Positions 8,901 to 53,654 of a stretch of 64,000 nt of DNA are shown here, one piece after another (the stretch's first letter is position 1; every line of letters starts with the position of its first letter). Below the pieces are notes generated by a model that saw nothing but the letters and a program-made list of their open reading frames with translations, searched no databases and was not told where the DNA came from. The stretch is from Macrostomum lignano (lineage: Eukaryota), in the NCBI GenBank assembly GCA_002269645.1, contig NIVC01001077.1:62001-126000 (forward strand), written 5' to 3'. Made by a program: the position numbers and the translations under genes.

Positions 8901-11900
8901 TGGTTGTAGTAGGCGCCGCAGTGGTGGTTGTAGTAGGCGCTTCAGTGGTGGTTGTAGTAGGCGCTTCAGTGGTGGTTGTAGTAGGCGCTTCAGTGGTGCT
9001 TGTAGTAGGCGCTTCAGTGGTGGTTGTAGTAGGCGCTTCAGTGGTGGTTGTAGTAGGCGCTTCAGTGGTGGTTGTAGTAGGCGCCGCAGTGGTGGTTGTA
9101 GTTGGCGCCGCAGTGGTGGTTGTAGTAGGTGCCGCAGTGGTGGTTGTAGTAGGCGCTTCAGTGGTGGTTGTAGTAGGCGCTTCAGTGGTGGTTGTAGTAG
9201 GCGCTTCAGTGGTGGTTGTAGTAGGCGCTTCAGTGGTGGTTGTAGTAGGCGCTTCAGTGGTGGTTGTAGTAGGCGCTTCAGTGGTGCTTGTAGTAGGCGC
9301 CGCAGTGGTGGTTGTAGTAGGCGCTTCAGTGGTGGTTGTAGTAGGCGCTTCAGTGGTGGTTGTAGTAGGCGCTTCAGTGGTGGTTGTAGTAGGCGCTTCA
9401 GTGGTGCTTGTAGTAGGCGCTTCAGTGGTGGTTGTAGTAGGCGCTTCAGTGGTGGTTGTAGTAGGCGCTTCAGTGGTGGTTGTAGTAGGCGCTTCAGTGG
9501 TGGTTGTAGTAGGCGCTTCAGTGGTGCTTGTAGTTTGCGCCGCAGTGGTGGTTGTAGTTGGTGGTTCTGTGGTGGTTGTAGTAGGCGCTTCAGTGGTGGT
9601 TGTAGTAGGCGCTTCAGTGGTGGTTGTAGTAGGCGCTTCAGTGGTGGTTGTAGTAGGCGCCGCAGTGGTGGTTGTAGTAGGCACCGCAGTGGTGGTTGTA
9701 GTAGGCGCTTCAGTGGTGGTTGTAGTAGGCGCCGCAGTGGTGGTTGTAGTAGGCGCTTCAGTGGTGGTTGTAGTAGGCGCTTCAGTGGTGCTTGTAGTAG
9801 GCGCTTCAGTGGTGGTTGTAGTAGGCGCTTCAGTGGTGGTTGTAGTAGGCGCTTCAGTGGTGGTTGTAGTAGGCGCCGCAGTGGTGGTTGTAGTAGGCAC
9901 CGCAGTGGTGGTTGTAGTAGGCGCTTCAGTGGTGGTTGTAGTAGGCGCCGCAGTGGTGGTTGTAGTAGGCGCTTCAGTGGTGGTTGTAGTAGGCGCTTCA
10001 GTGGTGCTTGTAGTAGGCGCTTCAGTGGTGGTTGTAGTAGGCGCTTCAGTGGTGGTTGTAGTAGGCGCTTCAGTGGTGGTTGTAGTAGGCGCTTCAGTGG
10101 TGGTTGTTGTAGGCGCTTCAGTGGTGCTTGTAGTAGGCGCTTCAGTGGTGGTTGTAGTAGGCGCTTCAGTGGTGGTTGTAGTAGGCGCTTCGGTGGTGGT
10201 TGTAGTAGGCGCTTCAGTGGTGGTTGTAGTAGGCGCTTCAGTGGTGGTTGTAGTAGGCGCTTCGGTGGTGGTTGTAGTAGGCGCTTCAGTGGTGGTTGTA
10301 GTAGGCGCCGTAGTGGTGGTTGTAGTAGGCGCTTCAGTGGTGGTTGTAGTAGGCGCTTCAGTGGTGGTTGTAGTTTGCGCCGCAGTGGTGGTTGTAGTTG
10401 GTGGTTCAGTGGTGGTTGTAGTAGGCGCTTCAGTGGTGGTTGTAGTAGGCGCTTCAGTGGTGGTTGTAGTAGGCGCTTCAGTGGTGGTTGTAGTAGGCGC
10501 TTCAGTGGTGGTTGTAGTAGGCGCTTCAGTGGTGGTTGTAGTTGGCGCTTCAGTGGTGGTTGTAGTAGGCGCTTCAGTGGTGGTTGTAGTAGGCGCCGCA
10601 GTGGTGGTTGTAGTTGGCGCCGCAGTGGTGGTTGTAGTAGGCGCCGCAGTGGTGGTTGTAGTAGGCGCTTCAGTGGTGGTTGTAGTAGGCGCTTCAGTGG
10701 TGGTTGTAGTAGGCGCTTCAGTGGTGGTTGTAGTAGGCGCTTCAGTGGTGGTTGTAGTAGGCGCTTCAGTGGTGGTTGTAGTAGGCGCTTCAGTGGTGGT
10801 TGTAGTAGGCGCTTCAGTGGTGGTTGTAGTTTGCGCCGCAGTGGTGCTTGTAGTTGGTGGTTCAGTGGTGGTTGTAGTAGGCGCTTCAGTGGTGGTTGTA
10901 GTTGGCGCTTCAGTGGTGGTTGTAGTAGGCGCTTCAGTGGTGGTTGTAGTAGGCGCCGCAGTGGTGGTTGTAGTAGGCGCTTCAGTGGTGCTTGTAGTAG
11001 GCGCCGCAGTGGTGGTTGTAGTAGGCGCTTCAGTGGTGGTTGTAGTAGGCGCTTCAGTGGTGGTTGTAGTAGGCGCTTCAGTGGTGGTTGTAGTAGGCGC
11101 TTCAGTGGTGGTTGTAGTTTGCGCCGCAGTGGTGGTTGTAGTTGGTGGTTCAGTGGTGGTTGTAGTAGGCGCTTCAGTGGTGGTTGTAGTAGGCGCTTCA
11201 GTGGTGGTTGTAGTAGGCGCTTCAGTGGTGCTTGTAGTAGGCGCTTCAGTGGTGGTTGTAGTAGGCGCTTCAGTGGTGCTTGTAGTTGGCGCTTCAGTGG
11301 TGGTTGTAGTAGGCGCTTCGGTGGTGGTTGTAGTAGGCGCTTCAGTGGTGGTTGTAGTAGGCGCTTCAGTGGTGGTTGTAGTAGGCGCTTCAGTGGTGGT
11401 TGTAGTAGGCGCTTCAGTGGTGGTTGTAGTAGGCGCCGCAGTGGTGGTTGTAGTAGGCACCGCAGTGGTGGTTGTAGTAGGCGCTTCAGTGGTGGTTGTA
11501 GTAGGCGCCGCAGTGGTGGTTGTAGTAGGCGCTTCAGTGGTGGTTGTAGTAGGCGCTTCAGTGGTGGTTGTAGTTTGCGCCGCAGTGGTCGTTGTAGTAG
11601 GCGCTTCAGTGGTGGTTGTAGTAGGCGCCGCAGTGGTGGTTGTAGTTGGCGCTTCAGTGGTGGTTGTAGTAGGCGCCGCAGTGGTGGTTGTAGTAGGCGC
11701 TTCAGTGGTGGTTGTAGTAGGCGCTTCAGTGGTGCTTGTAGTAGGCGCTTCAGTGGTGGTTGTAGTAGGCGCTTCAGTGTTGGTTGTAGTTTGCGCCGCA
11801 GTGGTGGTTGTAGTTGGTGGTTCAGTGGTGGTTGTAGTAGGCGCTTCAGTGGTGGTTGTAGTAGGCGCTTCAGTGGTGGTTGTAGTAGGCGCTTCAGTGG

Positions 11901-13190
11901 TGCTTGTAGTAGGCGCTTCAGTGGTGGTTGTAGTAGGCGCTTCAGTGGTGCTTGTAGTTGGCGCTTCAGTGGTGGTTGTAGTAGGCGCTTCGGTGGTGGT
12001 TGTAGTAGGCGCTTCAGTGGTGGTTGTAGTAGGCGCTTCAGTGGTGGTTGTAGTAGGCGCTTCAGTGGTGGTTGTAGTAGGCGCTTCAGTGGTGGTTGTA
12101 GTAGGCGCTTCAGTGGTGGTTGTAGTTTGCGCCGCAGTGGTCGTTGTAGTAGGCGCTTCAGTGGTGGTTGTAGTAGGCGCTTCAGTGGTGGTTGTAGTAG
12201 GCGCTTCAGTGGTGGTTGTAGTTTGCGCCGCAGTGGTCGTTGTAGTAGGCGCTTCAGTGGTGGTTGTAGTAGGCGCCGCAGTGGTGGTTGTAGTAGGCGC
12301 TTCAGTGGTGGTTGTAGTAGGCGCTTCAGTGGTTGTAGTAGGCGCCGCAGTGGTGGTTGTAGTAGGCGCTTCAGTGGTGGTTGTAGTAGGCGCTTCAGTG
12401 GTGGTTGTAGTAGGCGCTTCAGTGGTGGTTGTAGTTTGCGCCGCAGTGGTGGTTGTAGTTGGTGGTTCAGTGGTGGTTGTAGTAGGCGCTTCAGTGGTGG
12501 TTGTAGTAGGCGCTTCAGTGGTGGTTGTAGTAGGCGCTTCAGTGGTGCTTGTAGTAGGCGCTTCAGTGGTGGTTGTAGTAGGCGCTTCAGTGGTGCTTGT
12601 AGTTGGCGCTTCAGTGGTGGTTGTAGTAGGCGCTTCGGTGGTGGTTGTAGTAGGCGCTTCAGTGGTGGTTGTAGTAGGCGCTTCAGTGGTGGTTGTAGTA
12701 GGCGCTTCAGTGGTGGTTGTAGTTTGCGCCGCAGTGGTGGTTGTAGTAGGCGCTTCAGTGGTGGTTGTAGTAGCTAAAATTATTCATGTTGGAGTGTTGG
12801 CACTGGTTTTATATTGTGGAGTTAGTTCATCCAGTATTCGGTACGAGCTATATATGGTATATTTTTACTTACCAGCTTTAGAGGCTGTGACGAGAATAAG
12901 GACTGGAAGTAGGTTTTGTGCATCGTCATTTAATAGTATTTATAAGCCCAGAAATCTAATGCATGTACATGTAGCTCATCAGTCGAATGTGTGTAAAGTA
13001 TTGAAACACTGTCCTTACCTGTGACCAGCGCTAGTAGCACGGATGGCGTCGCACTTCTCGGCAAGCTGCCAGGGCGGAACCGGACCGTGGCCTGAAGATT
13101 ATGGAAGAATGAAAAAATATTAAAACGGAAGAAATGCAAAAGTAAAGTTGGAAATGATTAGCGAAACTTTACCGGTGCTAGTTTGCACAT
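1..13190 (-). CDS. Giant Thr-rich mucin-like secreted/surface protein: (TTTTTEAP)n and (DG/AG-x-TTTT)n blocks, TSP1, EGF, two calcium-binding EGF domains, NIDO-like domain; 3'-incomplete
   Basis: Hand-spliced exons (minus): 13173-13190, 13019-13091, 3456-12773, 3234-3374, 2541-2684, 2235-2375, 2020-2150, 1699-1917, 920-1072, 1-78. All GT-AG and phase-compatible (10416 nt = 3472 codons in the window). TSP1-like WVLESCSATCG..RRRQC; EGF DPCTPNPC..CACATGY; cbEGF DFDECSL..CVNTIGSYYCVC and DKDECSD..CTNTDGGYTCEC. NIDO-like segments FPIGDRFASAFY-ATRTGVLAF, IVAAFWS, PQWAAAVQYKHV, SSFTAYVLTD. The two small 5' exons (MCKLAP/ATVRF..VLLALVT) are less certain. Confidence 0.85.
105..345. repeat. Degenerate 10-bp repeat (GTTGCTATGC)n in a mucin intron
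   Basis: Repeated gttgctatgc/gtggttgcta units within intron 79-919. Confidence 0.85.
1113..1612. repeat. 40-bp minisatellite, ~12 copies, in mucin intron 1073-1698
   Basis: Unit ctgactgataagagcacctggctttattgggacacacctg. Confidence 0.95.
2428..2500. repeat. 15-bp repeat (gccaaaccttgagaa) x5-6 in mucin intron 2376-2540
   Basis: Directly visible; gives the SQGLA repeats in shadow ORF 2277..2600. Confidence 0.85.
2752..3233. repeat. Adjacent microsatellites (CTAA)n (2752-3045) and (CACT)n (3079-3233) in mucin intron 2685-3233
   Basis: Directly visible; on the sense (minus) strand they read (TTAG)n and (GTGA)n. Confidence 0.95.
3650..6439 (-). repeat. Coding 21-bp tandem repeat (DGSTTTT/DGATTTT/AGATTTT, ~130 copies), mucin PTS block 2
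   Basis: Plus-strand units such as gatccatctgtggttgtggtt and gcgccatctgtggttgtggtc; same reading frame as block 1. Confidence 0.95.
6440..12773 (-). repeat. Coding 24-bp tandem repeat (TTTTTEAP, ~260 copies), mucin PTS block 1
   Basis: Plus-strand unit ttcagtggtggttgtagtaggcgc with recurrent variants (AAP, AAQ, EPP, TTSTT); open in frame with ORF 3406..11460. Confidence 0.95.
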
Positions 13191-16800: not shown

Positions 16801-19800
16801 TCAATTAGCCTCAATAGTCTTCAACTGCTGCACTATTTCGTCAAAGTTTGGCCGCTGTTCCGGAGTCAGCTCCCAGCAGCGGCGCATCAGTTTGTAAACG
16901 TCCGACGGACAGCGTTCGGGCATCTCCATTCGGTAGCCGTTTAGCACGTGTTTTAACACCTGATCGGTCTTAATCCGGGGATAGGGCATCCGGCCAAACG
17001 TGTAGATCTCCCACAGCAGCACGGCGAACGACCAGACGTCAGATTTGGTGGAGAACTTGGCGTGATCTTTCACGCACTCCGGGGCGGTCCACTTCAAAGG
17101 TATTCGCTCCTGGGCACCGGGAGCTGCTCCGCCGCTGCCACCGTTCGAATGCTGTTTGCTATCGCGAAACGATTTCGCTAGCCCGAAATCCGCCACCTTG
17201 GAGGAATCAAAGCGGTTTAGGAATCCTCAAAATTATAGTTATTAGATAGATATGGATATGGCAAAGGCTGCCTACCTTGGCTCGACAGTCATCATCTAAT
17301 AGAATATTCCGAGCAGCCAAATCTCTGTGCACCAGCTGCTTGCCGGCCAGGTAAGCCATGCCAGCTGCGATGTCTCTGGAATCGCGAGCGATGTTGCATT
17401 AGGATCTGATTTACATGTTGCATTAGGATCTGATTTAAATGTTGCATTAGGGTCTGATGTGCATGTTGCATTAGGGTCTGATGTGCATGTTGCATTAGGG
17501 TCTGATGTACATGTTGCATTAGGGTCTGATGTGCATGTTGCATTAGGGTCTGATGTGCATCATGTTGCATTAGGGTCTGATGTGCATGTTGCATTAGGGT
17601 CTGATGTGCATGTTGCATTAGGGTCTGATGTGCATGTTGCATTAGGGTCTGATGTACATGTTGCATTAGGGTCTGATGTACATGTTGCATTAGGGTCTGA
17701 TGTGCATGTTGCATTAGGGTCTGATGTACATTTTGCATTAGGGTCTGATGTGCATGTTGCATTAGGGTCTGATGTACATGTTGCATTAGGGTCTGATGTA
17801 CATGTTGCATTAGGGTCTGATGTGCATGTTGCATTAGGGTCTGATGTACATGTTGCATCTGGATCTGATGCAGACTTATAAAAAGAGCCTAGTGTACACG
17901 TACACTGAATCAAGAGGGCCTGATGTACACTGAATCAAGAGGGCCTGATGTACACTGAATCAAGAGGGCCTGATGTACACTGAATCAAGAGGGCCTGATG
18001 TACACTGAATCAAGAGGGCCTGATGTACACTGAATCAAGAGGGCCTGATGTACACTGAATCAAGAGGGCCTAATGTATCTAGATACACTGCAAGGCAAGA
18101 TATCAAATGTCAACCGAGACTGCAACTTACAGGGCAAATTGTATCTGATTCTCTGGCATAATGACAGTCTGTCCTCGCGATCTCAGATAGTTGAGCAGCG
18201 AGCCCTTGCTCAGCAGTTCAGTCACCAGCATTGGCTGTCCATCCTGCCAGAGCAGCTCGATAAATCTAACTAAATTAGTGTGATTCAGTTTTCGCATCAG
18301 TTCGGCTTCTTCGCTTAGAGCGGCAATTTCTGCTTCAGTTGGCGGTTTCGAATTGTTATTAGCGGCATTGCTGCCGGCCAGTTCAGGCGCGGCCGTGGAA
18401 GCGGCAGCCGCGGCGGCACCACCGGAGATCATGCATTTGACGGCCACCTGTTCGTTTCTATACGTGCCCCGGCGCACCTCGGAGAATTCGCCACGGCCAA
18501 TCACCTCGTGAATTTGTAGATCGCCGTTAGACGCCTGAAAATGCCGCTGCTGATGGGGATGCTGAGGCTGGTGATGAAGATTCACCTGTGACACGTCGAC
18601 ACCTTTAACTAATTCGCAGCAGAGACCGTCGGCGTCGTTGCGATAGTGCTGCACCAGCAGGTCCAGAGGGTAGAATCTGCTCTCCTCGTCTATTGTGTAA
18701 TAAAATCTGGCCGAATTGAACGTCACCTTCTTGACGTGGTAGTGGCTCACCTGGAACAGACGCGGACAGGTTAGATATAGACATGCTATGGATGCAGTGA
18801 TGGACAGACAGACATGCTATAGCTGGAGATAATGGACAAGCAGACATGCTAGGGATGCAGGTGATGGACAGGCAGACATGCTAGGGATGCAGGTGATGGA
18901 CAGGCAGACATGCTAGGGATGCAGGTGATGGACAGGCAGACATGCTAGGGATGCAGGTGATGGACAGACAGACATGCTAGGGATGCAGATGATGGACAGA
19001 CAGATATGATATGGATGCAGGTGATGGACAGACAGACATGCTAGGGATGCAGATAATGGACAGACAGACATGCTAGGGATGCAGATGATGGACAGACAGA
19101 TATGATATGGATGCAGATGATAGACAGACAGACAGATATGATATGGATGCAGATGATAGACAGACAGACATGCTAGGGATGCAGATGATGGACAGAGACA
19201 TGCTAGGGATGCAGAGGATGGACAGACAGACATGCTAGGGATGCAGATGATGGACAGACAGATATGATATGGATGCAGATTATAGACAGACAGACATGCT
19301 AGGGATGCAGATGATGGACAGACAGATATGATATGGATGCAGATGATAGACAGACAGACATGCTAGGGATGCAGATGATGGACAGACAGACATGCTAGGG
19401 ATGCAGATAATGGAAAGACAGATATCCTATGGATGCAGATGATGGACAGACAGACATGCTAGGGATGCAGATAATGGACAGACAGATATGATATGGATGC
19501 AGATGATAGACAGACAGACATGCTAGGGATGCAGATGATGGACAGACAGACATGCTAGGGATGCAGATAATGGAAAGACAGATATCCTATGGATGCAGAT
19601 GATGGACAGACAGACATGCTAGGGATGCAGATAATGGACAGACAGACATGCTAGGGAAGCAGATGATAGACAGACAGACATGCTAGGGATGCAGATAATG
19701 GACAGACAGACATGCTAGGGATGCAGATAATGGACAGACAGACATGCTAGGGATATAGATAGAGAAAAGATCTCTTCCATCAGAGAGAATGATAAAGAAA

Positions 19801-20887
19801 ATTTGCCAGAGCCGGAACAATTACAACTACAGTCAGCAACAAAAGAATTGTTTTGAAGTTCGCACCTGGTTGCTGAAGACAACAGACAGGGTGAGGTCGC
19901 CGGGATGGTTTGAGCTCAGGCGAACCAGAAATAGGCCGTTGATATTTCTGGGCACCAGTCGTTTGTCGGTCTCTGCCCGACTAATGGAGCCGTGAAACCA
20001 AGGATACGCGGATAGATCCTCAGAGTCGCCTAAGGCTATATAGTTCTCAGGCACCAGGCCTTTCTGGTGACGCGAGTTCTCAGCCACAATCCAATTGGGA
20101 TCCTGCGAAATCGGATTAGTAATTAGAACGATTGAGCAGTGCGAATTCCCCATACAGTATAATACCCTTGGGGATTTATTCATCCCCATGAGAATTCCCC
20201 CATTCAGTATAATAGCCTTGGGGATTTATTCATCCCCATGAGAATTCCCCCATTCAGTACAATACCCTTGGGGATTTATTTATCCCAACGAGAATTCCCC
20301 CATTCAGTACAATACCCTTGGGAATTTATTCATCCCCATGAGAATTCCCCAATACAGTATAATACCCTTGCGGATTTATTCATCCCCATGAGAATTCCCC
20401 AATACAGTATAATACCCTTGGGGATTTTTTTATCCCCATGAGAATTCCCCAATACAGTATAATACCTTAGGGATTTATTCATCCCCATGAGAATTTCCCA
20501 AAATACAGTATAATACCTTAGGGATTTATTTATCTCCATGCAAATTCCCCTGACATAATTAAGTTTAAATTTATGAGACTGATCAAAATTCCCATATAGT
20601 TAAATTTTTTAAACAGATTCATTCCCACAAAATTTAGCCCTATATGCCAAAATATAATTCAGATTCTAAAGTATCCCTATTTGAAGAAAGATGAAAAACA
20701 AACTAAATTGAAACAAAGAATTGGAAAAATTATTTACATCCAAGCATTCCACAACAGTGAGATCTTCGCCTTCCTTGATTGGCAAATCCTCAGCGCACTT
20801 GCCAGCATAATCGAACAGTACAAAAACAGTCTGGCCAACAGATATTTGTCGCGGAGCTGTTTGGCTGGCTGTCATTGCCGGATGCAT
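16801..20887 (-). CDS. CSK: C-terminal Src kinase (Csk)-like SH3-SH2-tyrosine kinase, 500 aa
   Basis: Exons 20738-20887, 19866-20102, 18131-18750, 17276-17375, 16801-17196 (all GT-AG, phases 0,0,2,0; 1503 nt). SH3 ([27 protein letters not shown]), SH2 ([24 protein letters not shown]), kinase ([52 protein letters not shown]). No N-terminal myristoylation Gly, no activation-loop Tyr and no C-terminal Tyr tail, as expected for Csk rather than Src. Confidence 0.92.
17390..18075. repeat. Two abutting minisatellites (24-bp at 17390-17872; 25-bp at 17895-18075) in Csk intron 3
   Basis: Units gcattagggtctgatgt(g/a)catgtt and tacactgaatcaagagggcctgatg. Confidence 0.93.
18772..19757. repeat. ~28-32-bp minisatellite in Csk intron 2
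   Basis: Units like gacagacagacatgctagggatgcagatgatg. Confidence 0.92.
20140..20545. repeat. ~50-bp minisatellite, ~8 copies, in Csk intron 1
   Basis: Unit gggatttattcatccccatgagaattcccc(c)attcagtataataccctt. Confidence 0.9.
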
Positions 20888-21429
20888 TGTCTCAATTGAC
20901 AAAGGCGAACTGATTGTTTTTAGTTGAGTAATTTAAATTTACATAAAGTATGAAAATAAGAGAGCAGCATTAATAATAGATTATCTAGAATAGGAAAAAT
21001 ATAATTTTAGGGCAAATTTGTTTAATAAATAACAAACTTTTTACTTATGTGCAAATGAATATAATAATATATATAATAAATATATTAGATTCTTCTGATC
21101 TAATTTGATGCTCATATACACATTTTGTGTTGTTCATTTGGAGCCTGACTCCATAGAGGTCATGAAAGAAATGCAGGAGTTACAATACAAGCACAAACTG
21201 CAAGGACAGATTTCTTTATTAAACTGTATGAGATTTTTGGCAATAGCAGAGTACTGTCAATGTGTCAAATAAGGCTTGCTTAAACACTAGCAGAATGCAA
21301 GACAAAGACTTCTATTTCTACTTTCTATTGAAAGAGAACAAACTTTCTATTAAGTTTGTTCTATAGAGGACAGTCTCGAGCCTTAGCCTTGATATACAGT
21401 GTTTTGAAGCCTCAAAGCAATATTATCAT

Positions 21430-22030
21430 TCTTGGAAAAAAAGAATGTGATGATTTTTTATTGGAGGGATATGTTTGCTAGAGCACATGGCACATGTGAC
21501 TTCAAATGGCCAACAAAATCATCAATTTTGGATGACCAAAAGACGATACACATTTTTTCTGTTAAGCATGTTGAAAAGTTTGCTGATTTTGTTTTTAAAG
21601 ATAAGATATGGATAACCAAAGAAAGGAAGAATGATGATTGTTTCACTGGGGTTGATGTTTTCAGCTTTAGTGGTTTGTTGTGGGTTGACTTTATTGGTAG
21701 TGAATTTATTGATGTTGTAGTAGATGAAAGCAAGTGGGTAGCCTGTGTGCAGGTGTTGTCTACCATTTCAACTGCTCTGGTGGCCAGAGCGTCTCCTATG
21801 TGGGGAAAACAAAGAGGCACTTGCATACCAGAACCAGAGAGCACTGGCTCAAACCATTGGCCATTCAAACCCACCTCTTAGAATGCAATAGCTGCTCCAA
21901 CAGCATTCCTAATGAATGCTTTATAATAATTATCGACCAATGTACATCTGACTATAAACTTAAGATTCTTGAGGTCATGCACATAAAAGTTTTGTCCCCC
22001 AACCTCAACACTCAACTCTAACATAGTGGC
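21430..22030 (+). mobile_element. Penelope-like retroelement 3' fragment (GIY-YIG endonuclease), degenerate
   Basis: ORF 21734..22021: VVYHFNC..SYVGKTKRHLHTRTREH..AIQTHL..KLKILEVMHIK..PNLNTQ, the typical PLE GIY-YIG pattern. No intact RT seen. Confidence 0.8.
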
Positions 22031-22402
22031 GTAGACTATGTTCTCTATGTTTTTTAAGTTTTGAGAGAGAACACCAACTACGGACTACACTGCTCTGCCA
22101 AAATTTCTGTCCCTGACCTGCCTATTAATCTTTGGACAAATTTACTGTATAGAATAATTAATTACTCAACAAATCTTTTTTTGCCTCACACAAATACTTA
22201 TTATTGTTAGCCTCAGTTTCTTGTTTGTTCTAATAAAATAAACCTGAAGATGCACCATGGAGTGCAAAACAACGTGTCAACTTTGTTAAATGTTGACAGT
22301 TGGTTTTTTATTCTTATTATTACACAAGCTATTAAAAACTGATAGACATGTGTTGTGTTGCTGCTGTGGTCCCAGTTGGCACTTTGAATCAAAACCTTAG
22401 TT

Positions 22403-24927
22403 CTAGGGTGGGCAAACTCTGGCCCATGGGCCAGATCTAGCCTGTGAGGCTCTATTTTCTGGCTTGCCACATAGCTTATCATTTGCATTAAAATCTAGCC
22501 TGTATAAGCCTGGCATTAGAATTTCTAGATTCTAAGGCTACTACTAAAGAGTCCAGACTTTAATAAGCAAACAAAGACTAAGCTATTCCCTTCTCACTTT
22601 ATAGGATATTGTTAGATTCTAAGATTCAAAGATATGGGGTGCCTAAACTTAAGCTCAATTTTGGCTGCATGTCCGTCCTTTTGGGCAAATGGCATACATC
22701 TATAAGTTTTTCCCCTTTCTAGTAGTCTTCCTATCAAGCCTTAGACATTGTTATATTATCTAGAAAAAAAAGAGTTGGTTTGGCCCCTGCACTGTTTAGT
22801 AGGCTATAGCCTGCTGTTGGTAGACCATTTCCTCCTAAATTTGCTTATTTATGTGCCTATTAACTAAAATTTTCTCCTTAAATAAAATATTTTCTTTATT
22901 GTCATAGTGTGTCTCTTATCTATCTAATCATGTCTACTATACCTAAACTTGCTGAAAAGAGAAAAGTAGATCTCAAGTATTGGGCCTTTAAAGCTGATTA
23001 GTAGGAGAAGTATTTTTTGTTGAGCACTTTGGCTAGGCGCAGTGTCTTATCTGCTTTAAGATTATGGCTATCTTTAAAGAATTCAATGTGCGTCGCCACT
23101 GGGAAACTAATCACTAAACATTAGTCTATGCTTCAATCAATGCTTGCTAATAAGAAGAAAGCAAAGCTGTCTAGCAACCTACAGATGACTTTGCTCTTCT
23201 ATAAGCAGACCATTAAGGCAACAAGTTGACTTGTGCAAGTTACAAGGTCTCCTATCTACTAGCTTGCTAGATAAAGCCTTTCTTAGCTAGGGATTTCACT
23301 TCATCAAGGAGTGCCTTGTGGCTATGATGAACTTTGTCTATCTAGAACAGCATTCTGCTTTTGAGAGCATGAGCCTCTCATCCTATACTGTTTAATTTGA
23401 CAGCAAATTGAAGAAATGTTAGACAATGTGCACAACTTGCTAAAGACCTGCTGCTCTAATCCAATTGCATTCTCCCTAGCTCTTAAGAGAGCACTAACAT
23501 GAAGGATACAGCCTAGCTAGCCATTTTTATCCAAGGAGTCACTGCTGACCTTAAGATTCACAAGGAGTTTCTGCAGCTTGTCCTACTGCATGGTACCACC
23601 AATGGCAAGGACATATTTGATGCTGTGCTTCACTGTGTTGAAAAGCACTCACTTAATCTTTCTTGTCTTATATATATGACAACCAATGGTGTCCTAGCTA
23701 TAGTCCTTTTCATACTAGGTGCACGCTTGAACAAAAATCAATAGTTATAAATGCATGTAAAAAAATGAGTGCATACCTATTCTTAAAACTTTGCCAGTTT
23801 TGCGACAATAAATGACCTTTTTTATTTTATAATAGACCCTTTTTGACAGATAATTTGGTTAATTTTTTTTGCTTTTTTGGCAATACTATTTATAGTCAAC
23901 AATTGATATATGCAAATTTGTTTAAATGCTTTATTGCAAGCTTAAAAACTTAGAAAGCAAAAAATTTATGCTAAAAAGGAATTTTTCACCTTTTTTTCTA
24001 TTTCACAATAACTTTTTTGCGTGATTCTATAAAGTGCACACTATGTCTATGTGTATTTTTTTAGGAGTGATGCATGCCAACTATATACGTCTATTTTTGT
24101 ATGCAAGGCCAATGCATGCCTGAATTTTCAGGCATATACTACATGATCTAGAATGTAGTGTCTTAACAATGACTAGAAAGAAGAAAGGCACCATATCAGT
24201 ATCACTGCTAATGCATCACTATGAGACTTCTGGCTATACCCAGCCAATACAAAAAATGCATTGCATTATTTAGGGCTAGGCCCCTATCAGGAGGCCCTAG
24301 GTACCAAGTCTGCCAAACTTGCCGATATCATGTTGATTGTGGTAAAATTGGTCAATTCCATCCTCTCTAGCAACCTTAACTATTACCAGTTCCAGACTCT
24401 AGTGGACAAGATGAATGCACATTATGGAGACCTAGGCCTACTCTACTTCTGCAAAGTCTGCTGGCTGAGCTGAGCCATGGGGCCATTTTTCTATTGCTAG
24501 GGCCTAGTACTATTTTTCATCATTAAATACCAATTGTATAATCTGTAGCAATGAACTAATAACTTTTTCATTAGCGCTGATATTATTGCCTACAATCTAC
24601 ATAATACTACATATTTTATTATTTATAAATATAATAATATAGCTAGGCCTACATATTTTTTAAATGTCTTTTATAGGCCTACTTAAATTTCTCATCTATG
24701 TTAATTCAAGACTTTAGGCCGATATAAAGCATATATATCTGCATATTCCATGATTTTAATATTGTAATCAAGCCTACAATTACAAGCTTGATATGCAAAT
24801 AAACTATCTACCTACCTACTACCTAGGCCTATCTACCAAGAAAGTTGCCTCGTTATTGAGCTGTGGCCCGCGGCTGTTCAATGAAAGTATTATTTGGCCC
24901 ACTCTCTAAAAAGTTTGCCCGCCCCAG
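22403..24927 (+). mobile_element. Decayed hAT DNA transposon (Buster/SPIN/GTF2IRD2-like)
   Basis: 16-bp TIRs ctagggtgggcaaact / agtttgcccgccccag (14/16). 8-bp TSD ccttagtt (22395-22402) / ccctagtt (24928-24935) with central TA, typical of Buster. Transposase remnants from ATG 22930: KRKVD..EKYFF..QCLIC..KEFNVRRHWET, FSLALxESTx..DTAxLAIFIxGV, HCII..QEAL, YGDL..VxWLS. Many stops and frameshifts, and an AT-rich insertion at ~23710-24170. Confidence 0.9.
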
Positions 24928-26334
24928 CCCTAGTTACTAGTTCTGGTTGAAAAGATGGTAGCCTTCAGATAGCAATGTAAAAAATAAAGTTAGATAAGGC
25001 ATTGCGTAGTAGTAGAAGAAATATAATGAGACAGGCAATGAACATACGATATTTGCCATAACTTCTGTAGCATAGTCTCGTTTTTTGGCCAGTGCCGTTT
25101 TCTAGCCGCTTCCTTCATACTGTGGTAGGGCGAAGCTACCACTGTGTTGAATGACTCAATCAATGTAACCCACGGTTGGCACCTTTCCCGTCATCTGCTG
25201 CCCCATCCCCTGCCCCATCCTTTGCCCCATCGTCCGGCATTAATAATTTTTTTTGTTTTTATTTGCATGCGTTTTCTGTTTCCGTGGTTCCGTCCGCTGC
25301 CCAATCCTTTGCCCTATCCTCTGCCCCATCCCTTGCCCCTTGCCCTTTTTGCCCCATCCGCCGCAGGAATTCCCGGTTTTTAATATTTATGTGGCCGGTT
25401 TGGACCGCAAACTTGTTTATGCGCTTGCTCTTGCTCGCTCTCCTTTTCCTTCTCCTTCTCCTTTGTTTGCTTGTTTGTTTAATTAGTTTAAGTCCAGTGT
25501 TTAGTTCATTGAGAACGACCCCCGTAATACTTTTCCTTGTTCTAGTTTAAGGAGTTAATTTGCTTACACTTTAGAAGCTTAACCAGTTACTCTTATTCCG
25601 CACCCGGCATCGCCGCGGCAACTCTCGTTCGTTAGCAATAAAATTGTCGGCAAAAAATCTAATACTTAACAAACATAACGCCTGTTTTACAAATAAGTTC
25701 ATTAATTAATCTCAACTCTGAACGAGCTCTGAGATCTCAACGTTCCGTAATACGAAATCACGGTGGTGGCAGCGCTACACTACTGAAAGAAGTCAGTTAA
25801 GCAAATCAGCTAACAGCAGTGAAATTACGGTGTCAAGACCATTGAGTCTACAATCTGAACGACCGTGCCTGCTCAAGACCGCTCGACTACGATTACGACT
25901 ACCCTAAATACTAAATTGAGGACACGGCAGACGGAGTATTCCTGGAGAAAAGCAATTCGAATCATTCAGTGAAATTTTCCGGCTTTGCGAGTGCCGAGTT
26001 TAGGAAGGCGGAATTCAAAAGTTAGAACCACCCATTTTCCGGTGTCAGCTAACGACAGACCGATTTCAAATTATCAATTCTTTTCTCCGCCCCACCTCAA
26101 TACACATCCTTTCCAGGAAAATGGCTTTATTTTAAAGGAAGTATAACAAACCAAAAAAGATAAAAATATTGATTTTAGAAAATTGAATGTAGTCGCCTGA
26201 AAAAAACTTTAAATAATGCTGGTTAATACTTATTTCAAGCTATTTTTAGAATAGTGCTTTTTCGACCTTTCATAGAAGCAGCCAGCTCAGCCCATCAGCT
26301 GAGCCCGCGCATGGAGCATTGAGTCTGTTAAATA

Positions 26335-29300
26335 GGTTCCTGGACACTTCGTCATCTTAAAACTTCGTCATCTTGATGACGAAGTTACCATGGATTTTGG
26401 ACGTTTCGTCATATCAAAAAATAGTTAGTAAATCTAGATGACGAAGTGACCGAATTTTGAGGACACTTCGTCGTCATCCCAAGATTTCGCAAGGCTGTAA
26501 GTTGTTATTCGATTGTTATATTGTTATAAATTGTTATTCGGTCAATTTAGTCTGTAACAAGCATACGTACAAACCTTAGAGATTTAGTATATTTGGAAGT
26601 ATTAGGTTTAGGATTAAATACACACTTAGAAATTTAACTTGTCGCTATATAATTGGCATCCACTCTATCGCCGCGCTGGCCTGCCACGCCCAAGCGATCT
26701 ACTGCGCCGTCGGCGACTCCAGCTCGCAGGCCATCTCATCCGCGCCGAGTCGTACTGCCCACAGCCGGTGCAGTAGATGCTGCTGCTCACGCTGCAGGCA
26801 CCCTCTACCGGCGAGGTCAAGCGCGAACTTGGCGTTACGTCGACTGTCTGCTGGCTGACTGCCGGTGGCGCGGCCTTTGTTCGCGCCCAAGCCATGAAAT
26901 GCTAGTGCTCGCCATTTATAGTTCTTGGCCTAACTGTTAAAACATAATCAACACTTCAAAAATATGAAGTGATGATAAGGCCTGGCCAACAGCATAGTGT
27001 TGCTGCTTAATTTTAAGCTTTTTCATAAACAAAAAGTAACTGAAAGTTCGATTCGAAAAAATTCTGTAAACTTTTGGCTCGTACCCTAATAGGTTCAACT
27101 TGCCAATGATGGGTTTCGACCTTCGGGCTCCTTGTTAGGGAAGCCTTCGGGCCTCAGGCTCAGAAATAAATCAATTAGAGACCTGGCCCCCACTCCTGTC
27201 AGATGGTTAGCCCCCATGGTAGCTTGATCGTGTGGCGAGCAGTCTAGGTCCTATAGCTAAGAGAGGGAGAGCGAGAGACGAGCAGGGAGAATTTTGAAAG
27301 TAGAAATTAGCTAATCCGCAGATCAACTAACTTGCTGCCACCAGCCCGTGCGCCCTGGCTCACCACACCGGGACTCTCGAAATCGGGCTTCCGACTAGAA
27401 GGGGCTTTGCACTTACCCGCCAACTAGTGTCTTTTGCTGTCAATCTCGAAGTCATAGCCGATGACAAGGGACACTGCTGGGACTAGATCGCATTGGCCAT
27501 GCAGGTACAGAGGGGACTTGTGCAGGGGATTCTTGCAGTGGCGAGACTATGGGGTAGCTACATGTACTATTACATTGCTAAATACGAAGATATGTACTTT
27601 TGGCCTTCAACGCGCCAACTAGCCTCTCATAGCGCTGATGATAGACTAACTCGAACGTCAGAGACCTCGCACGATTCATTACCCGAGCCGCTTGGCTACC
27701 CTAGAGTGCACAAAGTACATCTCTGGCGTCGATTCTGCACTTCTGGCAGTTTTGCTCACTGATTTGATAGATTGGTCGACTGAGAACTGCCTTGCCATTG
27801 GTCCACTGTGACCGGCGCCTACTAGCTTAGCTACTCATCTGAGCCATCGGCGATCAAAGAAATAAAACCGATAAAAATAAGTGTTAGATTTAACCTTCTC
27901 CTTAGTTCGCTTCACACTTCAGATTGAATTGGAGTTTTAGACTACTAGCAGTATTATTGAATGATTTCTGCCTCAGCGACAGCACTACTGAACAAAATGA
28001 GCAAGTGTGCGCCTAATCCAGCTACTGCAACAGGGGACAGATAGGGGATCACCCAATCAAGCAAGTCTAGGTAGCCTCTCACCCAACCAATCAGAAACTC
28101 AACAGCCGGAGACCAGGTAATCCACAGTGACCGAATCGGCTTGATGCTCTGCAGCTGTAGACTCGGGATGATGCTGTCACAATCTTCGCTGTTAGCTAGC
28201 AGGTGATGCTCTTCACTTGATGTTCGCTGCTGATGACCGGGGGACTCGTCCTTGATGATGAGGGGGGGGAGTCGCAATCCGGGGATCAAGAAACGACGGT
28301 CAGGCTCCGGGAGGTCTCCAGCTAGACCAAGTTCCCAGGAGGTTGAGGTCCGAGCGGGCCAAAAACACCGGTTTAAATAGCCGCCAACTGGACCGCAGTT
28401 TGTTATAATGGAACACGTCGATTCTGATTGGCTGAGCCGTTTTGTTAAAATGAGCGCCGAATTTTCTGATTGGCTAAGCTTGTTGCTACCCAGAATCACG
28501 TGACCGGAAGATCCTATCAGTTTCCACAGGGTCGTAAAAAGATGACAGGTGCGGCCATAAATCAATCAAAATCGCAACAAAATGATTTATGACTTTTCGC
28601 GTAGGATTGACAGAAATTAATGAAAAAATATACATTAGAAAGCTCTTATTAAATAGAAAGTGAAGATAATGAAGAGAAATCACTAATCGCTAATCCCAAG
28701 GTACTTTTAGGGGTAAAACGTATAGCTGTCAAAGCTGTCACACGCTTGAGTGAACACGAACAATAGGCTCTGACCTCATAAATCTTGATGGCCTGTCAAA
28801 ATGATGAGAAAAAAGCTACCGCCCGCATCCTCTCAGACCATCTGGCGCCTGCCTCAACACTGAGTGAGGCGCAGGTGGCTGTCAGACCAGCTTCGAAAGC
28901 GATGATTTATGACCCAAAAAGCTGCGCCTATGTTATTATGACTACTAGTATGACCAAACATTATATCTAGTATAGATTCTATGACAATTCGCAGAAAAAG
29001 AGTAAAATGCCCTTAGCCTGCTTGTCAGTAGGCTAGTAAGTTTAGAGCCCATGTGCTAGCGCGGGATTTGGGAAAAAGTGCGTCCTCATCACCAAGCTCT
29101 AATAATTATTTTTGCTTCCTTGTTAAAGCCCTAATATTGGCATTATCACTTCTACAACCGAAGGGGAGGCAACAAAGTATAATGTATGGCCATACATGTG
29201 TAGTTACGTAATGGATTTCTCTTTAAGGACTTAACCAACCCTTGAATCACAATTCCCCATACAGTCTGAGCTAATTAAGAGTTACGTAATGGATTTCTCC

Positions 29301-31233
29301 TTGCTCCACCTGCAGGGACTTAACCAACCCTTCACACGCATACAGTCTGAGCTATAGAGCGTTTTCACCCCCTAAATGTGCTAAGCCGTACGTTTTTGTG
29401 TCTATGAGTGCAACGTGCCAATTCTCCAACCAACTATAACCACAGTGGCGGATCCATTTCCCTGATGTCAGGGAAGTCTGTGCATGATACAATTCTATCT
29501 TTAATTTACTTTAAAATGTATAATTGGAGGCCAGGCATGGCCTGAGTCATGCGTGCTTGATTTTGAAGCTGCTGTTTAGCAGTCACTGCGCTCCGTTTTC
29601 CCTCATGCTATTGCAGGGCTGCCTATTCCACTACTCCCAAGCAATTTTTCGCCGTGTACAGCACATGGGCCTCCAGCGAGCCTATCTCGAGGACCCTGGC
29701 ACGCGAGAATTCTGCCGCTTGCTCATGGCGCTGCCTTATCTGCCAGGCGAACACATGGCTGATGGGCTTGCCCAGGTTATCGCTGGTGTTCAGTCTCCAG
29801 AACTACTCGACCTTGCCGAGTACGTCACCAGCACCTGGCTGGACAGCCCGGTGCATAGTGTCCAAGAGATAAGCGTGTTCGCCCAGTCGATTCGAACTAA
29901 CAACGAGTGCGAAGGCTGGCACCGGCGACTAAAGCAGCGGGCGGAGCACACCCTGCAGCTGCATGACTCTATGGAGTTGCTGCACAAGGAAGCCGAGCTA
30001 GCTTGTGCCAGTTTACGCCTCCCTGGTGCGCGAGCAAGGAGCCCAAGAGCGTCAGTGCAAGTTGCGTTACCAGCAGCTGCAGGAGTCTGCAGAGCGCAAC
30101 TGGGCTAAATATCGAGCTGGCGAACTCTCCATTCGCAGCTTCCTGCTTTAGCTGCTCTCGCCTGGGTCACATCCCTCTCGGTTCGGCGGTCAAGTGCAAG
30201 GTCATCAGTGAGTATATATTTTATGTACGTAAGTTCTTCCTTGATTTTTAAAATCAGCTATGGAATTATTCTATTCGGACAAAATCACTTTTGTAGTTGT
30301 GTAGTAACTTCGAAATTTTACTTAGCTACATTTACCTAAGAAAAATTTAGCTACATTTAGCTACACTTAATATTAGTTGGTACTAGCCTATTAATTCTGC
30401 AGTAATTTAAATGTGTCGGTCTTAATGCTATTCTCTTTGTGCTTTGTGAACTTTGTGATCTTTGTGCCTACATGTATAGCTACGAATTACGGTATTTAAA
30501 GACTATCTTTGTGGGTCGTAACTCCGCCATTGTCTGGTCCCAAGCCCAGAATGTGAAAGGAGGAGGGCGACTATATGTAGATACATATGCATGTATAATG
30601 TCTAATCTTAATCTTTATACATGTAGTTGCATGTACGAGTATACGTATATGTTACATAGGTCACTGGTCAGATCGTCATAATCCATTTTGTCATTCCGGA
30701 TGACGAAGTGACTAAAAGCAAAGTAGCTTTGAAAAATAATATGACGAAGTGACAAAATATCTAGTTATGCTGGATACTTCGTCATCAACCAATTAATCTG
30801 TGTAAGATTCGAGTTAGTGTTTTTTTTAACTATGAGCTGCGGCAAGCAGAACCGAGATCGACAGGTTTTATCAATCGAGATGACAAAATGACTGGGATCA
30901 TTAGGATTTCCAAGTAAATATGTTTGATTGCCACGTTAATTCACTTGAAGTTGGAACTAATATGATTGGTGAAAGACAAAAATGACTTTCTTCAGGTAGT
31001 GCATGCTAATTAAGATGACGAAGTGACCAAAGTCGAGGTGAGCACCCCAGACACCCAGATGACGAAATGACTAGGAACCGTTACATATATATAGCAAAGT
31101 TTTTCATACAAAAAGTGGATGACGAAGTGTCCTGGGAGTAGATGACGAAGTGTCCAGGGAATAGATGACGAAGTGTCCAAATTAGTAGGCCTAATGTGGA
31201 TGACGAAGTTGTAAGATGAAATGTCCAGGAACC
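26335..31233 (+). mobile_element. Mutator-like (MULE) element, ~4.9 kb, with TIRs, subterminal GATGACGAAGT motifs and internal cargo
   Basis: Left end ggttcctggacacttcgtcatcttaaaacttcgtcatc matches the reverse complement of the right end (..gatgacgaagttgtaagatgaaatgtccaggaacc). 9-bp flanks tgttaaata / tactaaata (7/9). Many gatgacgaagt copies at 26345-26480 and 30698-31210. MULE transposase remnant inside. Confidence 0.85.
29535..30180 (+). pseudogene. MULE transposase C-terminal remnant
   Basis: VLDFEAAV*QSLRSVFP, then a frameshift into GCLFHYSQAIFRRVQHMGL..LMALPYLP..YVTSTW..RTNNECEGWH (DFE / GCxFH / RTNNxxEGWH motifs). N-terminal half missing. Confidence 0.85.
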
Positions 31234-46790: not shown

Positions 46791-46916
46791 AAATAAATTA
46801 GGTTGAGTCACAATCGTCTAAAATGAGGCAGATAAGGATTCAATTATAAAACCGTGCAACATATAAAAATTGTCCGTGCGCACCCCCGCCTCAGGCCCGC
46901 TGGCACCGCTGCAACA

Positions 46917-53556: not shown

Positions 53557-53654
53557 TGTTGCGGAATTCATTTTTGCAACTCTAATTGATCAACATTGGT
53601 CTTTGTCCTGGTGAAATGTGCTCTTTGTGTATCTATTGGGGTTGGCATGCTCAT

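What the first reader, a model, noticed from the sequence alone, without database searches (positions are those of the whole stretch)
22403..24927. RIP-like hypermutation (CpA>TpA plus CpG decay) of a hAT transposon in an animal genome
Seen, judged against well-conserved Buster/SPIN transposase motifs: LDESTD reads L-N-EST-N (ctt aa-, act aac; TpG>TpA twice). DTAQL reads DTA*L (CAG>TAG). FIRG reads FIQG (CGA>CAA). TTDGAPAM reads TTNGVLAI (CpG>CpA, CCA>CTA, ATG>ATA). DW reads D* (TGG>TAG). HQEAL reads YQEAL (CAT>TAT). NHRQF reads NYYQF (CAT>TAT; CGC>TAC, two steps). VRWLSR reads VCWLS* (CpG twice). The two TIRs differ only by TG>TA and CG>TG. Nearly all changes I could polarise are C>T/G>A, and about half are in CpA/TpG. 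TGG>TAG also occurs in the MULE remnant, and probably in its PHD-like cargo. Known: directional CpA>TpA mutation of repeats is the hallmark of fungal RIP, whereas animal 5mC decay is mostly CpG-limited. Inference: a repeat-targeted silencing/mutator system (heavy non-CpG methylation plus deamination, a RID/DNMT-like enzyme or an APOBEC-like deaminase) may operate in this lineage. Ancestral codons are inferred from family consensus, not from a real alignment.
Basis: partly seen in the sequence, partly recalled or inferred. Interest (0 to 1): 0.85.

Follow-up and report, generated by a model that had tools for sequence, protein, structure and literature searches.

The report
Decayed flatworm hAT transposon, C-to-T bias
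This is a dead, truncated hAT DNA transposon in the flatworm Macrostomum lignano whose decay is dominated by C-to-T changes, mainly at CpG and about 2-3-fold raised at CpA; this fits methylation-linked deamination better than a fungal-style RIP system, and the CpA excess is a single-locus lead.

Summary
Window 22403-24927 is a real hAT insertion: 16-bp inverted ends with 2 differences and an 8-bp target duplication matching 7/8. It is a decayed, C-terminally truncated transposase in Macrostomum lignano.

I polarised changes against seven relatives (70-88% nt identity to each other), with the element nested among them. GC>AT transitions are 112 of 166 substitutions; AT>GC transitions are 15. 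C>T hits 33% of CpA sites, 16% of CpC/CpT and 44% of CpG. CpA versus CpC/CpT gives OR 2.6-3.1, p 1e-3 to 1e-4, and a rate ratio of 2.1-3.1. Only 3 of 26 ancestral CpGs survive.

The RIP reading is not shown:
- CpG exceeds CpA.
- The CpA/TpG substrate index is not depleted (1.55; composite index negative).
- C>T and G>A are interleaved.
- Minisatellites in the window show no CpA excess.
- CpG loss follows a domain edge (o/e 0.06-0.15 inside, 1.10 just outside the right end).

M. lignano keeps DNMT1 and DNMT3. Best reading: 5mC deamination plus AT-biased decay. The cause of the CpA component is unresolved, and it rests on one element.

The parts
22395..22402 (.). Left target-site duplication, CCTTAGTT
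   Evidence: Matches CCCTAGTT at 24928-24935 in 7 of 8 positions. Central TA as in the Buster-clade nnnTAnnn pattern (pattern from own knowledge, Arensburger et al. 2011).
22403..22418 (+). Left terminal inverted repeat, CTAGGGTGGGCAAACT
   Evidence: Inverted match to 24912-24927 with 2 differences. Relatives have CA(G/C)GGGCGGGCAAACT-type ends.
22419..22929 (+). 5' subterminal / untranslated region
   Evidence: The first ~60 bp align to the 5' end of the relative in L004. All family CpGs are lost here (CCGG>CTGG, CGCG>CATG, CCGG>CTAG). CpG o/e 0.06, TpA o/e 1.12.
22930..23705 (+). Transposase remnant, part A (start ATG to ...TTNGVLAIV): zinc finger, DUF4371 and RNase-H-like region, with stops and frameshifts
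   Evidence: tblastn to P0001, codon alignment, 10 stops in the alignment frame. Relatives carry PF18658, PF14291, PF27073 and PF27046.
23706..24160 (.). About 455-bp AT-rich insert interrupting the transposase, absent from all relatives
   Evidence: In relatives ...DGAPAMVGEKKG... is contiguous. Both flanks align to the same ~15 family bases (GTCCTAGCTATAGTC / GTCTTAACAATGACT). GC 0.29. No other copy in the window. Identity unknown.
24161..24475 (+). Transposase remnant, part B (MTRKKKG ... VCWLS*), ending at about codon 350 of about 600
   Evidence: The C-terminal half, including the hAT dimerisation region, has no counterpart, so this copy is internally deleted.
24476..24911 (+). 3' non-coding / subterminal region
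   Evidence: The last ~75 bp align to the 3' ends of relatives in L001, L004 and L005. It keeps 6 CpGs, CpG o/e 0.51.
24912..24927 (-). Right terminal inverted repeat (reverse complement CTGGGGCGGGCAAACT)
24928..24935 (.). Right target-site duplication, CCCTAGTT
24936..26900 (.). Right flank: CpG-replete domain (context, not part of the element)
   Evidence: CpG o/e 1.10 against 0.06-0.15 inside the element.
20551..22394 (.). Left flank: CpG-depleted domain (context). Holds an SH3-like exon of a tyrosine-kinase gene (20666-20902, minus strand) and an ORF that looks GIY-YIG-like by eye (21734-22021)
   Evidence: CpG o/e 0.26, TpA o/e 0.72. SH3 hit is weak, E = 0.003 and below the curated cut-off. 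The GIY-YIG-like ORF has no Pfam hit.

Best explanation
A non-autonomous, long-dead copy of a horizontally spread hAT family (Buster clade, ZBED5/FAM200/GTF2IRD2-like) inserted upstream of, or in the 5' region of, a tyrosine-kinase gene of Macrostomum lignano. It lies at the edge of a CpG-depleted domain, which I take to have been methylated in the germline.

Its decay is ordinary in kind. Deamination-type C>T/G>A transitions dominate. They are strongest at CpG, where loss is nearly saturated, and they sit on top of an AT-biased background. C>T at CpC/CpT is about 4 times T>C.

There is also a real but modest hypermutability of CpA/TpG, 2-3 times CpC/CpT and strongest at A/T-C-A. The most economical cause is deamination of 5mC laid down at CpA by the non-CpG side-activity of a DNMT3-type enzyme in the same methylated domain. 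An intrinsic sequence-context effect is the alternative.

Shown: element anatomy, polarised spectrum, context ratios, the domain boundary and the lack of strand clustering. Inferred: methylation as the cause, and the DNMT3 origin of the CpA component.
For: Host identification: the MFS exon is 100% identical to a M. lignano protein.

Structure: TIRs, TSD and the transposase remnant.

Family and polarisation:
- Relatives from crabs, mantis shrimp, hagfish and unnamed ENA assemblies are 70-88% identical in DNA.
- The element is nested among them on a transversion-only tree, so the consensus polarises its branch.

Spectrum:
- C>T 50/208, G>A 62/201, A>G 9/174, T>C 6/181.
- By context: CpA 0.33, CpC 0.17, CpT 0.16, CpG 0.44.
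- Ancestral CpG retained in 3 of 26 cases.
- CpA versus CpY rate ratio 2.1-3.1, bootstrap 95% interval 1.2-3.9.
- OR 3.1, p = 1.3e-4 after alignment filtering.
- At codon positions 1+2, 24/70 against 13/128.
- Living relatives show no CpA excess under the same method.

Methylation-type geography:
- CpG o/e is 0.06-0.15 in the element, 0.26 in the left flank and 1.10 in the right flank.
- The right ~450 bp of the element keeps CpGs, while the left end lost them all.

Literature: M. lignano retains DNMT1 and DNMT3 and has low-level 5mC (PMC11292947, PMC9246332, PMC10658182).

Own knowledge: DNMT3 enzymes methylate CpA as their main non-CpG target.
Against: - Only one element was analysed, with 38 CpA events.
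- No methylation data were available for this locus or species, and reported 5mC in adults is low.
- The mammalian DNMT3 non-CpG motif (TACAG/TACAC) is not seen. There is no T enrichment at -2, CAG equals CAC, and TCA is as hot as ACA.
- At third codon positions the CpA/CpY contrast is weak at the looser threshold (14/44 against 18/65).
- The element's GC (36-41%) is below the window mean (46%), and its GC>AT to AT>GC ratio (about 6.5) exceeds that of the minisatellites (about 2.5). Some locus- or TE-specific process is therefore not excluded.
Confidence: 0.6

Rival explanations
1. RIP-like, repeat-induced hypermutation: a homology-sensing, DNMT-like (RID-type) system mutates C>T at CpA in duplicated DNA in the germline.
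For: - C>T at CpA is 2-3 times CpC/CpT.
- TpA/ApT rose from 0.27-0.59 in relatives to 1.03-1.07.
- Ancestral CpG>TpA double hits occur.
- Own knowledge: some fungi show RIP-like patterns at both CpG and CpA.
Against: - CpG is hit harder than CpA.
- (CpA+TpG)/(ApC+GpT) is 1.55-1.62, above the 1.03 RIP threshold, and the composite index is -0.5 to -0.6.
- C>T and G>A are interleaved (runs z = -0.8).
- Minisatellite arrays in the window, which are also repeats, show CpA 26/91 against CpC 31/90 and CpT 23/83.
- A MULE-like remnant nearby keeps its CpGs.
- The two ends of the element are decayed unequally, following the flanks.
- No RID-type enzyme is known in animals (own knowledge).
Confidence: 0.07
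2. Editing by an AID/APOBEC-like or other single-strand DNA cytidine deaminase acting on the transposon, for example during transposition or transcription.
For: - Strong C>T/G>A dominance.
- A 5'-neighbour effect: A/T before C 0.34 against G 0.19 and C 0.26, with ACA 0.50 and TCA 0.45.
- Own knowledge: an A/T-C-A preference loosely recalls APOBEC1/APOBEC3A-type contexts.
Against: - No strand asymmetry (C>T 0.24 against G>A 0.31) and no clustering.
- The main determinant is the 3' base (A or G), not the 5' base as for known AID/APOBECs. TCT and ACT are not raised.
- The only reported flatworm AID/APOBEC-like sequence was attributed to host contamination (PMC5889660).
- CpG saturation and the domain boundary fit methylation better.
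Confidence: 0.08
3. Nothing beyond CpG decay and context-free AT-biased drift: the CpA excess is chance or an artefact of using a cross-species consensus for a single copy.
For: - Single locus with 38 events. The lower bootstrap bound of the rate ratio is 1.2.
- At third codon positions the contrast is weak at one threshold.
- Minisatellites show no CpA effect.
- Part of the element's branch predates its death (transversion distance similar to the living relative P0016).
Against: - It is significant at every threshold tried for all sites (p 0.0006-0.035) and after alignment filtering (p = 1.3e-4).
- It is strongest at codon positions 1+2, where pre-death changes are least likely.
- It is symmetric on both strands (CA>TA 11/45, TG>TA 15/55).
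- It is absent in leave-one-out controls.
Confidence: 0.2

Closest known systems
hAT superfamily, Buster clade (Charlie/SPIN/Buster; source of the domesticated genes ZBED5, FAM200 and GTF2IRD2)
   Same: - 8-bp TSD with central TA and 16-bp TIRs ending ...GGGCAAACT.
- Transposase remnant about 50-53% identical in protein and 67-70% in DNA to intact relatives.
- Those relatives carry PF18658, PF14291, PF27073 and PF27046.
- Cross-phylum near-identity of relatives, as in known horizontally transferred hAT families.
   Different: - This copy lacks the C-terminal half of the transposase.
- It carries a ~455-bp insert, at least 10 stops and several frameshifts.
- Its own sequence gives only a weak, sub-threshold zinc-finger hit in Pfam.
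Methylation-driven CpG decay of silenced DNA in animals (5mC deamination)
   Same: - Near-complete CpG loss to TpG/CpA.
- Sharp CpG o/e boundary with the neighbouring DNA.
- The host retains DNMT1 and DNMT3 (PMC11292947, PMC9246332).
   Different: An added 2-3-fold excess of C>T at CpA, which classic animal CpG decay does not predict. Methylation at this locus was not measured.
Fungal repeat-induced point mutation (RIP)
   Same: Directional C>T/G>A, raised rate at CpA, large gain of TpA, many premature stops.
   Different: - CpG exceeds CpA.
- The substrate index is not depleted and the composite index is negative.
- No strand-coordinated runs.
- Other repeats in the window are unaffected.
- Dependence on duplication is untested, and no RID-type enzyme is known in animals.
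Non-CpG (CpA) methylation by DNMT3-type enzymes (vertebrate oocytes, ES cells, neurons)
   Same: CpA is the favoured non-CpG context. The effect is weaker than at CpG and sits in the same domain as the CpG loss.
   Different: No TACAG/TACAC-type flank preference. No evidence that M. lignano methylates CpA. A mutational footprint of mCpA has not been described in invertebrates, to my knowledge.

Membership tests
hAT superfamily | 8-bp target-site duplication | tested here: met
   CCTTAGTT / CCCTAGTT flank the TIRs, 7 of 8 identical.
hAT superfamily | Short terminal inverted repeats (about 10-25 bp) | tested here: met
   16 bp, 14 of 16 complementary. The same GGGCAAACT core occurs at the ends of relatives.
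hAT superfamily | hAT-type transposase (zinc finger, RNase-H-like DDE core, C-terminal hAT dimerisation domain) | tested here: inconclusive
   The N-terminal ~350 codons align to intact relatives with PF18658, PF14291, PF27073 and PF27046. The C-terminal half, including the dimerisation region, is deleted. The element's own Pfam hit is a weak zinc finger only.
Buster clade of hAT | TSD consensus nnnTAnnn | tested here: met
   CCCTAGTT and CCTTAGTT have TA at positions 4-5. The consensus is from own knowledge (Arensburger et al. 2011).
RIP (repeat-induced point mutation) | C>T transitions concentrated at CpA relative to other contexts | tested here: inconclusive
   CpA 0.33 against CpC/CpT 0.16, but CpG 0.44, and only 3 of 26 CpGs retained. 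CpA is raised but is not the dominant target.
RIP (repeat-induced point mutation) | RIP indices: TpA/ApT > 0.89 and (CpA+TpG)/(ApC+GpT) < 1.03; composite index > 0 | tested here: not met
   TpA/ApT 1.07 (met), substrate index 1.55 (not met), composite -0.48. For the coding part the values are 1.03, 1.62 and -0.59. Thresholds are from own knowledge (Margolin 1998; Lewis 2009).
RIP (repeat-induced point mutation) | Acts only on duplicated sequence, over the whole duplicated segment | not testable with these tools
   There is a single copy in the window. No M. lignano copies were reachable. Indirect evidence against: unequal decay of the two ends and unaffected minisatellites.
RIP (repeat-induced point mutation) | RID/Masc1-type cytosine methyltransferase homologue in the genome | not testable with these tools
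   The proteome is not searchable by organism here. The literature reports only DNMT1 and DNMT3 (PMC9246332).
AID/APOBEC-type DNA editing | Strand-coordinated clusters of C>T (or G>A) with specificity set by the 5' neighbour | tested here: not met
   47 C>T and 61 G>A are interleaved, 50 runs against 54 expected, z = -0.8. The 3' base is the main determinant.
5mC-deamination decay of a methylated domain | CpG>TpG/CpA loss far above background, confined to a domain | tested here: met
   CpG count is 41-78 in relatives and 5 here. Ancestral CpG fates were TG 9, CA 8, TA 3 and retained 3. CpG o/e jumps to 1.10 at the right flank.
5mC-deamination decay of a methylated domain | Cytosine methylation present at the locus in the germline | not testable with these tools
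   Only literature statements that the species has DNMT1, DNMT3 and low 5mC (PMC11292947, PMC10658182).

The most novel reading that the evidence does not exclude
Macrostomum lignano modifies or deaminates cytosines at CpA as well as CpG in silenced DNA in its germline, either through DNMT3-type non-CpG methylation or through an unrecognised deaminase. This would leave a heritable CpA>TpA footprint on transposons. It would be a RIP-like outcome in a bilaterian animal, reached by a different route.
Probability: 0.22. Interest if true: 0.7.

Novelty: new member of a known kind. Interest (0 to 1): 0.35.

Why it matters
As it stands, this is an ordinary dead hAT copy. Its decay pattern is mostly what CpG methylation plus AT-biased mutation produces.

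Two things give it some value:
- It is sequence-level evidence that M. lignano, a flatworm that kept DNMT1 and DNMT3 and whose methylome pattern is described in reviews as unknown, has sharply bounded CpG-depleted domains that include transposons.
- The 2-3-fold CpA excess, if it is reproduced genome-wide, would indicate germline non-CpG methylation or another context-specific mutator in an invertebrate. That can be tested directly with existing assemblies and one methylome.

The family is also a clear case of cross-phylum horizontal transfer, involving crabs, a mantis shrimp, a hagfish and a flatworm.

Tried and rejected
- Other copies in the window: none found by blastn.
- M. lignano copies through the protein database: none among 36 hits. 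The closest are about 53% identical and come from other phyla.
- Exact-ORF look-up of the 91-aa ORF spanning the left junction, to reach other assemblies or homeologous copies: not on record.
- The GIY-YIG-like ORF at 21734-22021 is too short for context statistics and has no Pfam hit.
- Plant-like CHG signature: rejected, since CAG 0.37 is about the same as CAC 0.36 and CTG is 0.15.
- Mammalian TACA(G/C) motif: not seen.
- CTAG enrichment (28 against about 8 expected in the element; 12 against 0-2 in the coding part) as a specific target: rejected. These sites arise from CCAG, CTGG and CCGG by the same transitions, and CCA is not a hot trinucleotide (0.23).
- First full-length MAFFT addition of the element misaligned everything after the ~455-bp insert. 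I redid it with two fragments.
- Per-array occurrence counts suggest CpA > CpY in the two arrays next to the element (18779-19754 and 20143-20550). Those counts are not independent events, so I did not use them.
- Wasik et al. 2015, the primary source for M. lignano methylation, is not in the held library.
Full report
**Source and setting.** The window comes from the free-living flatworm Macrostomum lignano. The exon at 59816-60871 (minus strand) is 100% identical to protein BOX15_Mlig016358g1. The window is packed with minisatellites, at least 30 arrays. It also carries exons of a tyrosine kinase, an adenosine deaminase, an innexin and a monocarboxylate-type transporter.

**Anatomy of the element.** The stretch 22403-24927 is a bona fide hAT insertion.
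- Its 16-bp inverted ends are CTAGGGTGGGCAAACT and, reverse-complemented, CTGGGGCGGGCAAACT.
- An 8-bp target duplication, CCTTAGTT / CCCTAGTT, flanks them. Its central TA is typical of the Buster clade.
- On the plus strand, from the ATG at 22930, lies a transposase remnant riddled with stops and frameshifts.
- The remnant is interrupted at 23706-24160 by an AT-rich insert of about 455 bp that no relative has.
- It stops at about codon 350 of about 600, so the C-terminal half, including the dimerisation region, is deleted.
- There is no second copy in the window.

**The family.**
- The best protein matches are about 50-53% identical. They are annotated 'GTF2IRD2-like' in snow crab, mitten crab, mantis shrimp and hagfish, and some come from unnamed ENA assemblies. 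They carry PF18658, PF14291, PF27073 and PF27046.
- These relatives are 70-88% identical to each other in DNA despite spanning phyla, which indicates a horizontally spread family.
- I fetched the DNA of seven of them, built a codon alignment and added the two coding pieces of the element.
- On a transversion-only distance tree the element attaches inside the group, between (P0016, P0001) and the rest. Sites where both sides agree therefore give the state at its attachment point, and changes can be polarised.

**Checking the observation.** At sites conserved in at least 85% of relatives the counts are as follows.

| Change or context | Count | Fraction |
|---|---|---|
| C>T | 50/208 | 0.24 |
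| G>A | 62/201 | 0.31 |
| A>G | 9/174 | 0.05 |
| T>C | 6/181 | 0.03 |
| All transversions | 39 | – |
| C>T at CpA (strand-symmetrised) | 38/114 | 0.33 |
| C>T at CpC | 17/100 | 0.17 |
| C>T at CpT | 14/90 | 0.16 |
| C>T at CpG | 39/89 | 0.44 |

For CpA against CpC+CpT, the odds ratio is 2.6 with p = 0.001.

The per-C figure understates the CpG rate because one hit destroys the site. Of 26 ancestral CpGs, 3 survive; the others became TG (9), CA (8), TA (3) or something else (3). That implies a per-C rate roughly 6-9 times the CpC/CpT rate, against 2-3 times for CpA.

**Robustness of the CpA excess.**
- With stricter conservation of both site and neighbour, the CpA/CpY rate ratio stays at 2.1-3.1. 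The bootstrap 95% interval at the 85%/85% threshold is 1.2-3.9.
- Removing poorly aligned columns gives 38/107 against 27/177, OR 3.1, p = 1.3e-4.
- The contrast is clearest at codon positions 1+2 (24/70 against 13/128), where changes made while the lineage was still functional are least likely. It is weaker at third positions at the looser threshold (14/44 against 18/65).
- It is symmetric across strands: CA>TA 11/45 and TG>TA 15/55.
- Applying the same procedure to each living relative gives no CpA excess, with OR at or below 1.3.
- Within CpA, A/T-C-A is hotter than G/C-C-A (25/53 against 13/61, p = 0.005). This last comparison is post hoc.

'About half at CpA/TpG' is too high, though: the share is about 35%, with about 36% at CpG.

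**Why this is not RIP as known.**
- CpG, not CpA, is the main target.
- The classic substrate index (CpA+TpG)/(ApC+GpT) is 1.55 for the element and 1.62 for its coding part, where RIP requires less than 1.03. CpG decay replenishes CpA/TpG, so the composite index is negative. Only the product index rose: TpA/ApT went from 0.27-0.59 in relatives to 1.03-1.07, and TpA count from 10-22 to 79.
- C>T and G>A changes are interleaved along the element (50 runs against 54 expected). This argues against a few strand-specific bursts, whether RIP cycles or APOBEC-type editing.
- The window's non-coding minisatellites are also repeats. Polarised against their own consensus, they show no CpA excess among distinct variants (CpA 26/91, CpC 31/90, CpT 23/83). 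Their GC>AT to AT>GC ratio is about 2.5, against about 6.5 in the element.
- A MULE-like remnant 5 kb away has a frameshift and stops. One of these is a TAG opposite Trp in its single homologue. It still sits in DNA with CpG o/e of about 0.7-0.9.

**Geography of the CpG loss.**
- CpG o/e is 0.06-0.15 through most of the element and 0.26 in the left flank. That flank holds an SH3-like exon of the kinase gene.
- It is 0.51 in the last 450 bp of the element and 1.10 immediately to the right.
- Compared with family termini, the left end has lost every CpG (CCGG>CTGG, CGCG>CATG, CCGG>CTAG). The right end keeps three.

The decay therefore follows a regional boundary that cuts through the element's right end, not the element's outline. 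That is what a methylated chromatin domain would produce. A mechanism that senses the repeat itself would not.

**Mechanism.** Reviews and a 2024 methylome paper state that M. lignano, unlike planarians and parasitic flatworms, retains DNMT1 and DNMT3 and has low-level 5mC. They describe its genomic methylation pattern as unknown (PMC9246332, PMC11292947, PMC10658182). The primary paper was not available.

The simplest account is deamination of 5mC in a germline-methylated domain plus AT-biased background mutation. For the CpA component I consider two causes.
- **DNMT3 non-CpG activity.** CpA is its preferred off-target (own knowledge). However, the vertebrate flank motif is not seen here.
- **An intrinsic context effect** at pyrimidine-purine steps flanked by A/T.

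A DNA deaminase is a weaker alternative. The context is governed by the 3' base, there is no strand bias, and the only reported flatworm AID/APOBEC-like sequence was judged to be host contamination (PMC5889660).

**Limits.**
- Everything rests on one copy and a cross-species consensus.
- No other M. lignano copy, homeologous locus or second TE family could be reached with the tools.
- No methylation data exist for this locus.
- The element's GC (36-41%) lies below the window mean (46%). Its GC>AT bias exceeds that of the minisatellites. Some locus- or TE-specific enhancement of C>T remains possible.

**Verdict.** The RIP-like, repeat-targeted mechanism is not shown, and several defining features fail. 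The element is a new member of a known kind. The CpA excess is a modest lead that can be tested.

Noticed in passing
L001-L007; proteins P0001-P0033: The hAT family is 70-88% identical in DNA, and up to 88% in protein, between crabs (Chionoecetes, Eriocheir), a mantis shrimp (Oratosquilla), a hagfish (Myxine) and unnamed ENA assemblies. The flatworm copy nests among them. This looks like cross-phylum horizontal transfer.
   Followed up: partly
window 23706-24160: An AT-rich insert of about 455 bp (GC 0.29) splits the transposase. Both flanks align to the same ~15 family bases (GTCCTAGCTATAGTC / GTCTTAACAATGACT), as if a long target duplication had since diverged, mostly by transitions. Its identity is unknown and there is no other copy in the window.
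   Followed up: partly
window 24500-25500: Sharp switch of CpG o/e from about 0.1-0.5 to about 1.1 within a few hundred bases at the right end of the element. Across the window, CpG o/e is strongly bimodal (0.14-0.34 against 0.7-0.97), suggesting mosaic germline methylation in this flatworm.
   Followed up: partly
window 3406-13024: Two huge coding-looking tandem arrays, 21-bp x 132 and 24-bp x 264. On the minus strand they read as a threonine-rich mucin-like ORF of 2684 aa (TTTTTEAP repeats) ending in a cysteine-rich tail. GC skew is about +0.5.
   Followed up: no
whole window: Exceptional density and diversity of minisatellites: at least 30 arrays with periods of 10-137 bp, many 85-100% homogeneous, several inside or next to genes.
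   Followed up: partly
window 29448-30108: MULE-like transposase remnant, judged by motif (DFEAA...FP...GCxFHxxQ...) with no Pfam hit. It has a frameshift and stops. The TAG at 29577-29579 aligns with Trp in the only homologue (41% identity). The surrounding DNA is not CpG-depleted.
   Followed up: partly
window 21734-22021 (+): A 95-aa ORF with a GIY-YIG-like motif by eye (YVGKTKRHLHTRTREH...), possibly the tail of a Penelope-like retroelement. Pfam gives no hit, so this is unconfirmed. It lies in CpG-poor DNA next to the hAT.
   Followed up: partly
window 18779-19754 and 20143-20550: In the two minisatellites nearest the hAT, which lie in the same CpG-poor domain, C>T variant occurrences are far more frequent at CpA (26/290) than at CpC/CpT (5/359). 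These counts include copies of the same variant and are not independent events.
   Followed up: partly
window 16801-20902 (-), 42189-42665 (+), 46854-47258 and 53186-53614 (+): Host genes: tyrosine-kinase exons with a weak upstream SH3-like exon, an adenosine deaminase exon and two innexin exons. The innexin exons are separated by about 6 kb that is largely minisatellite.
   Followed up: partly
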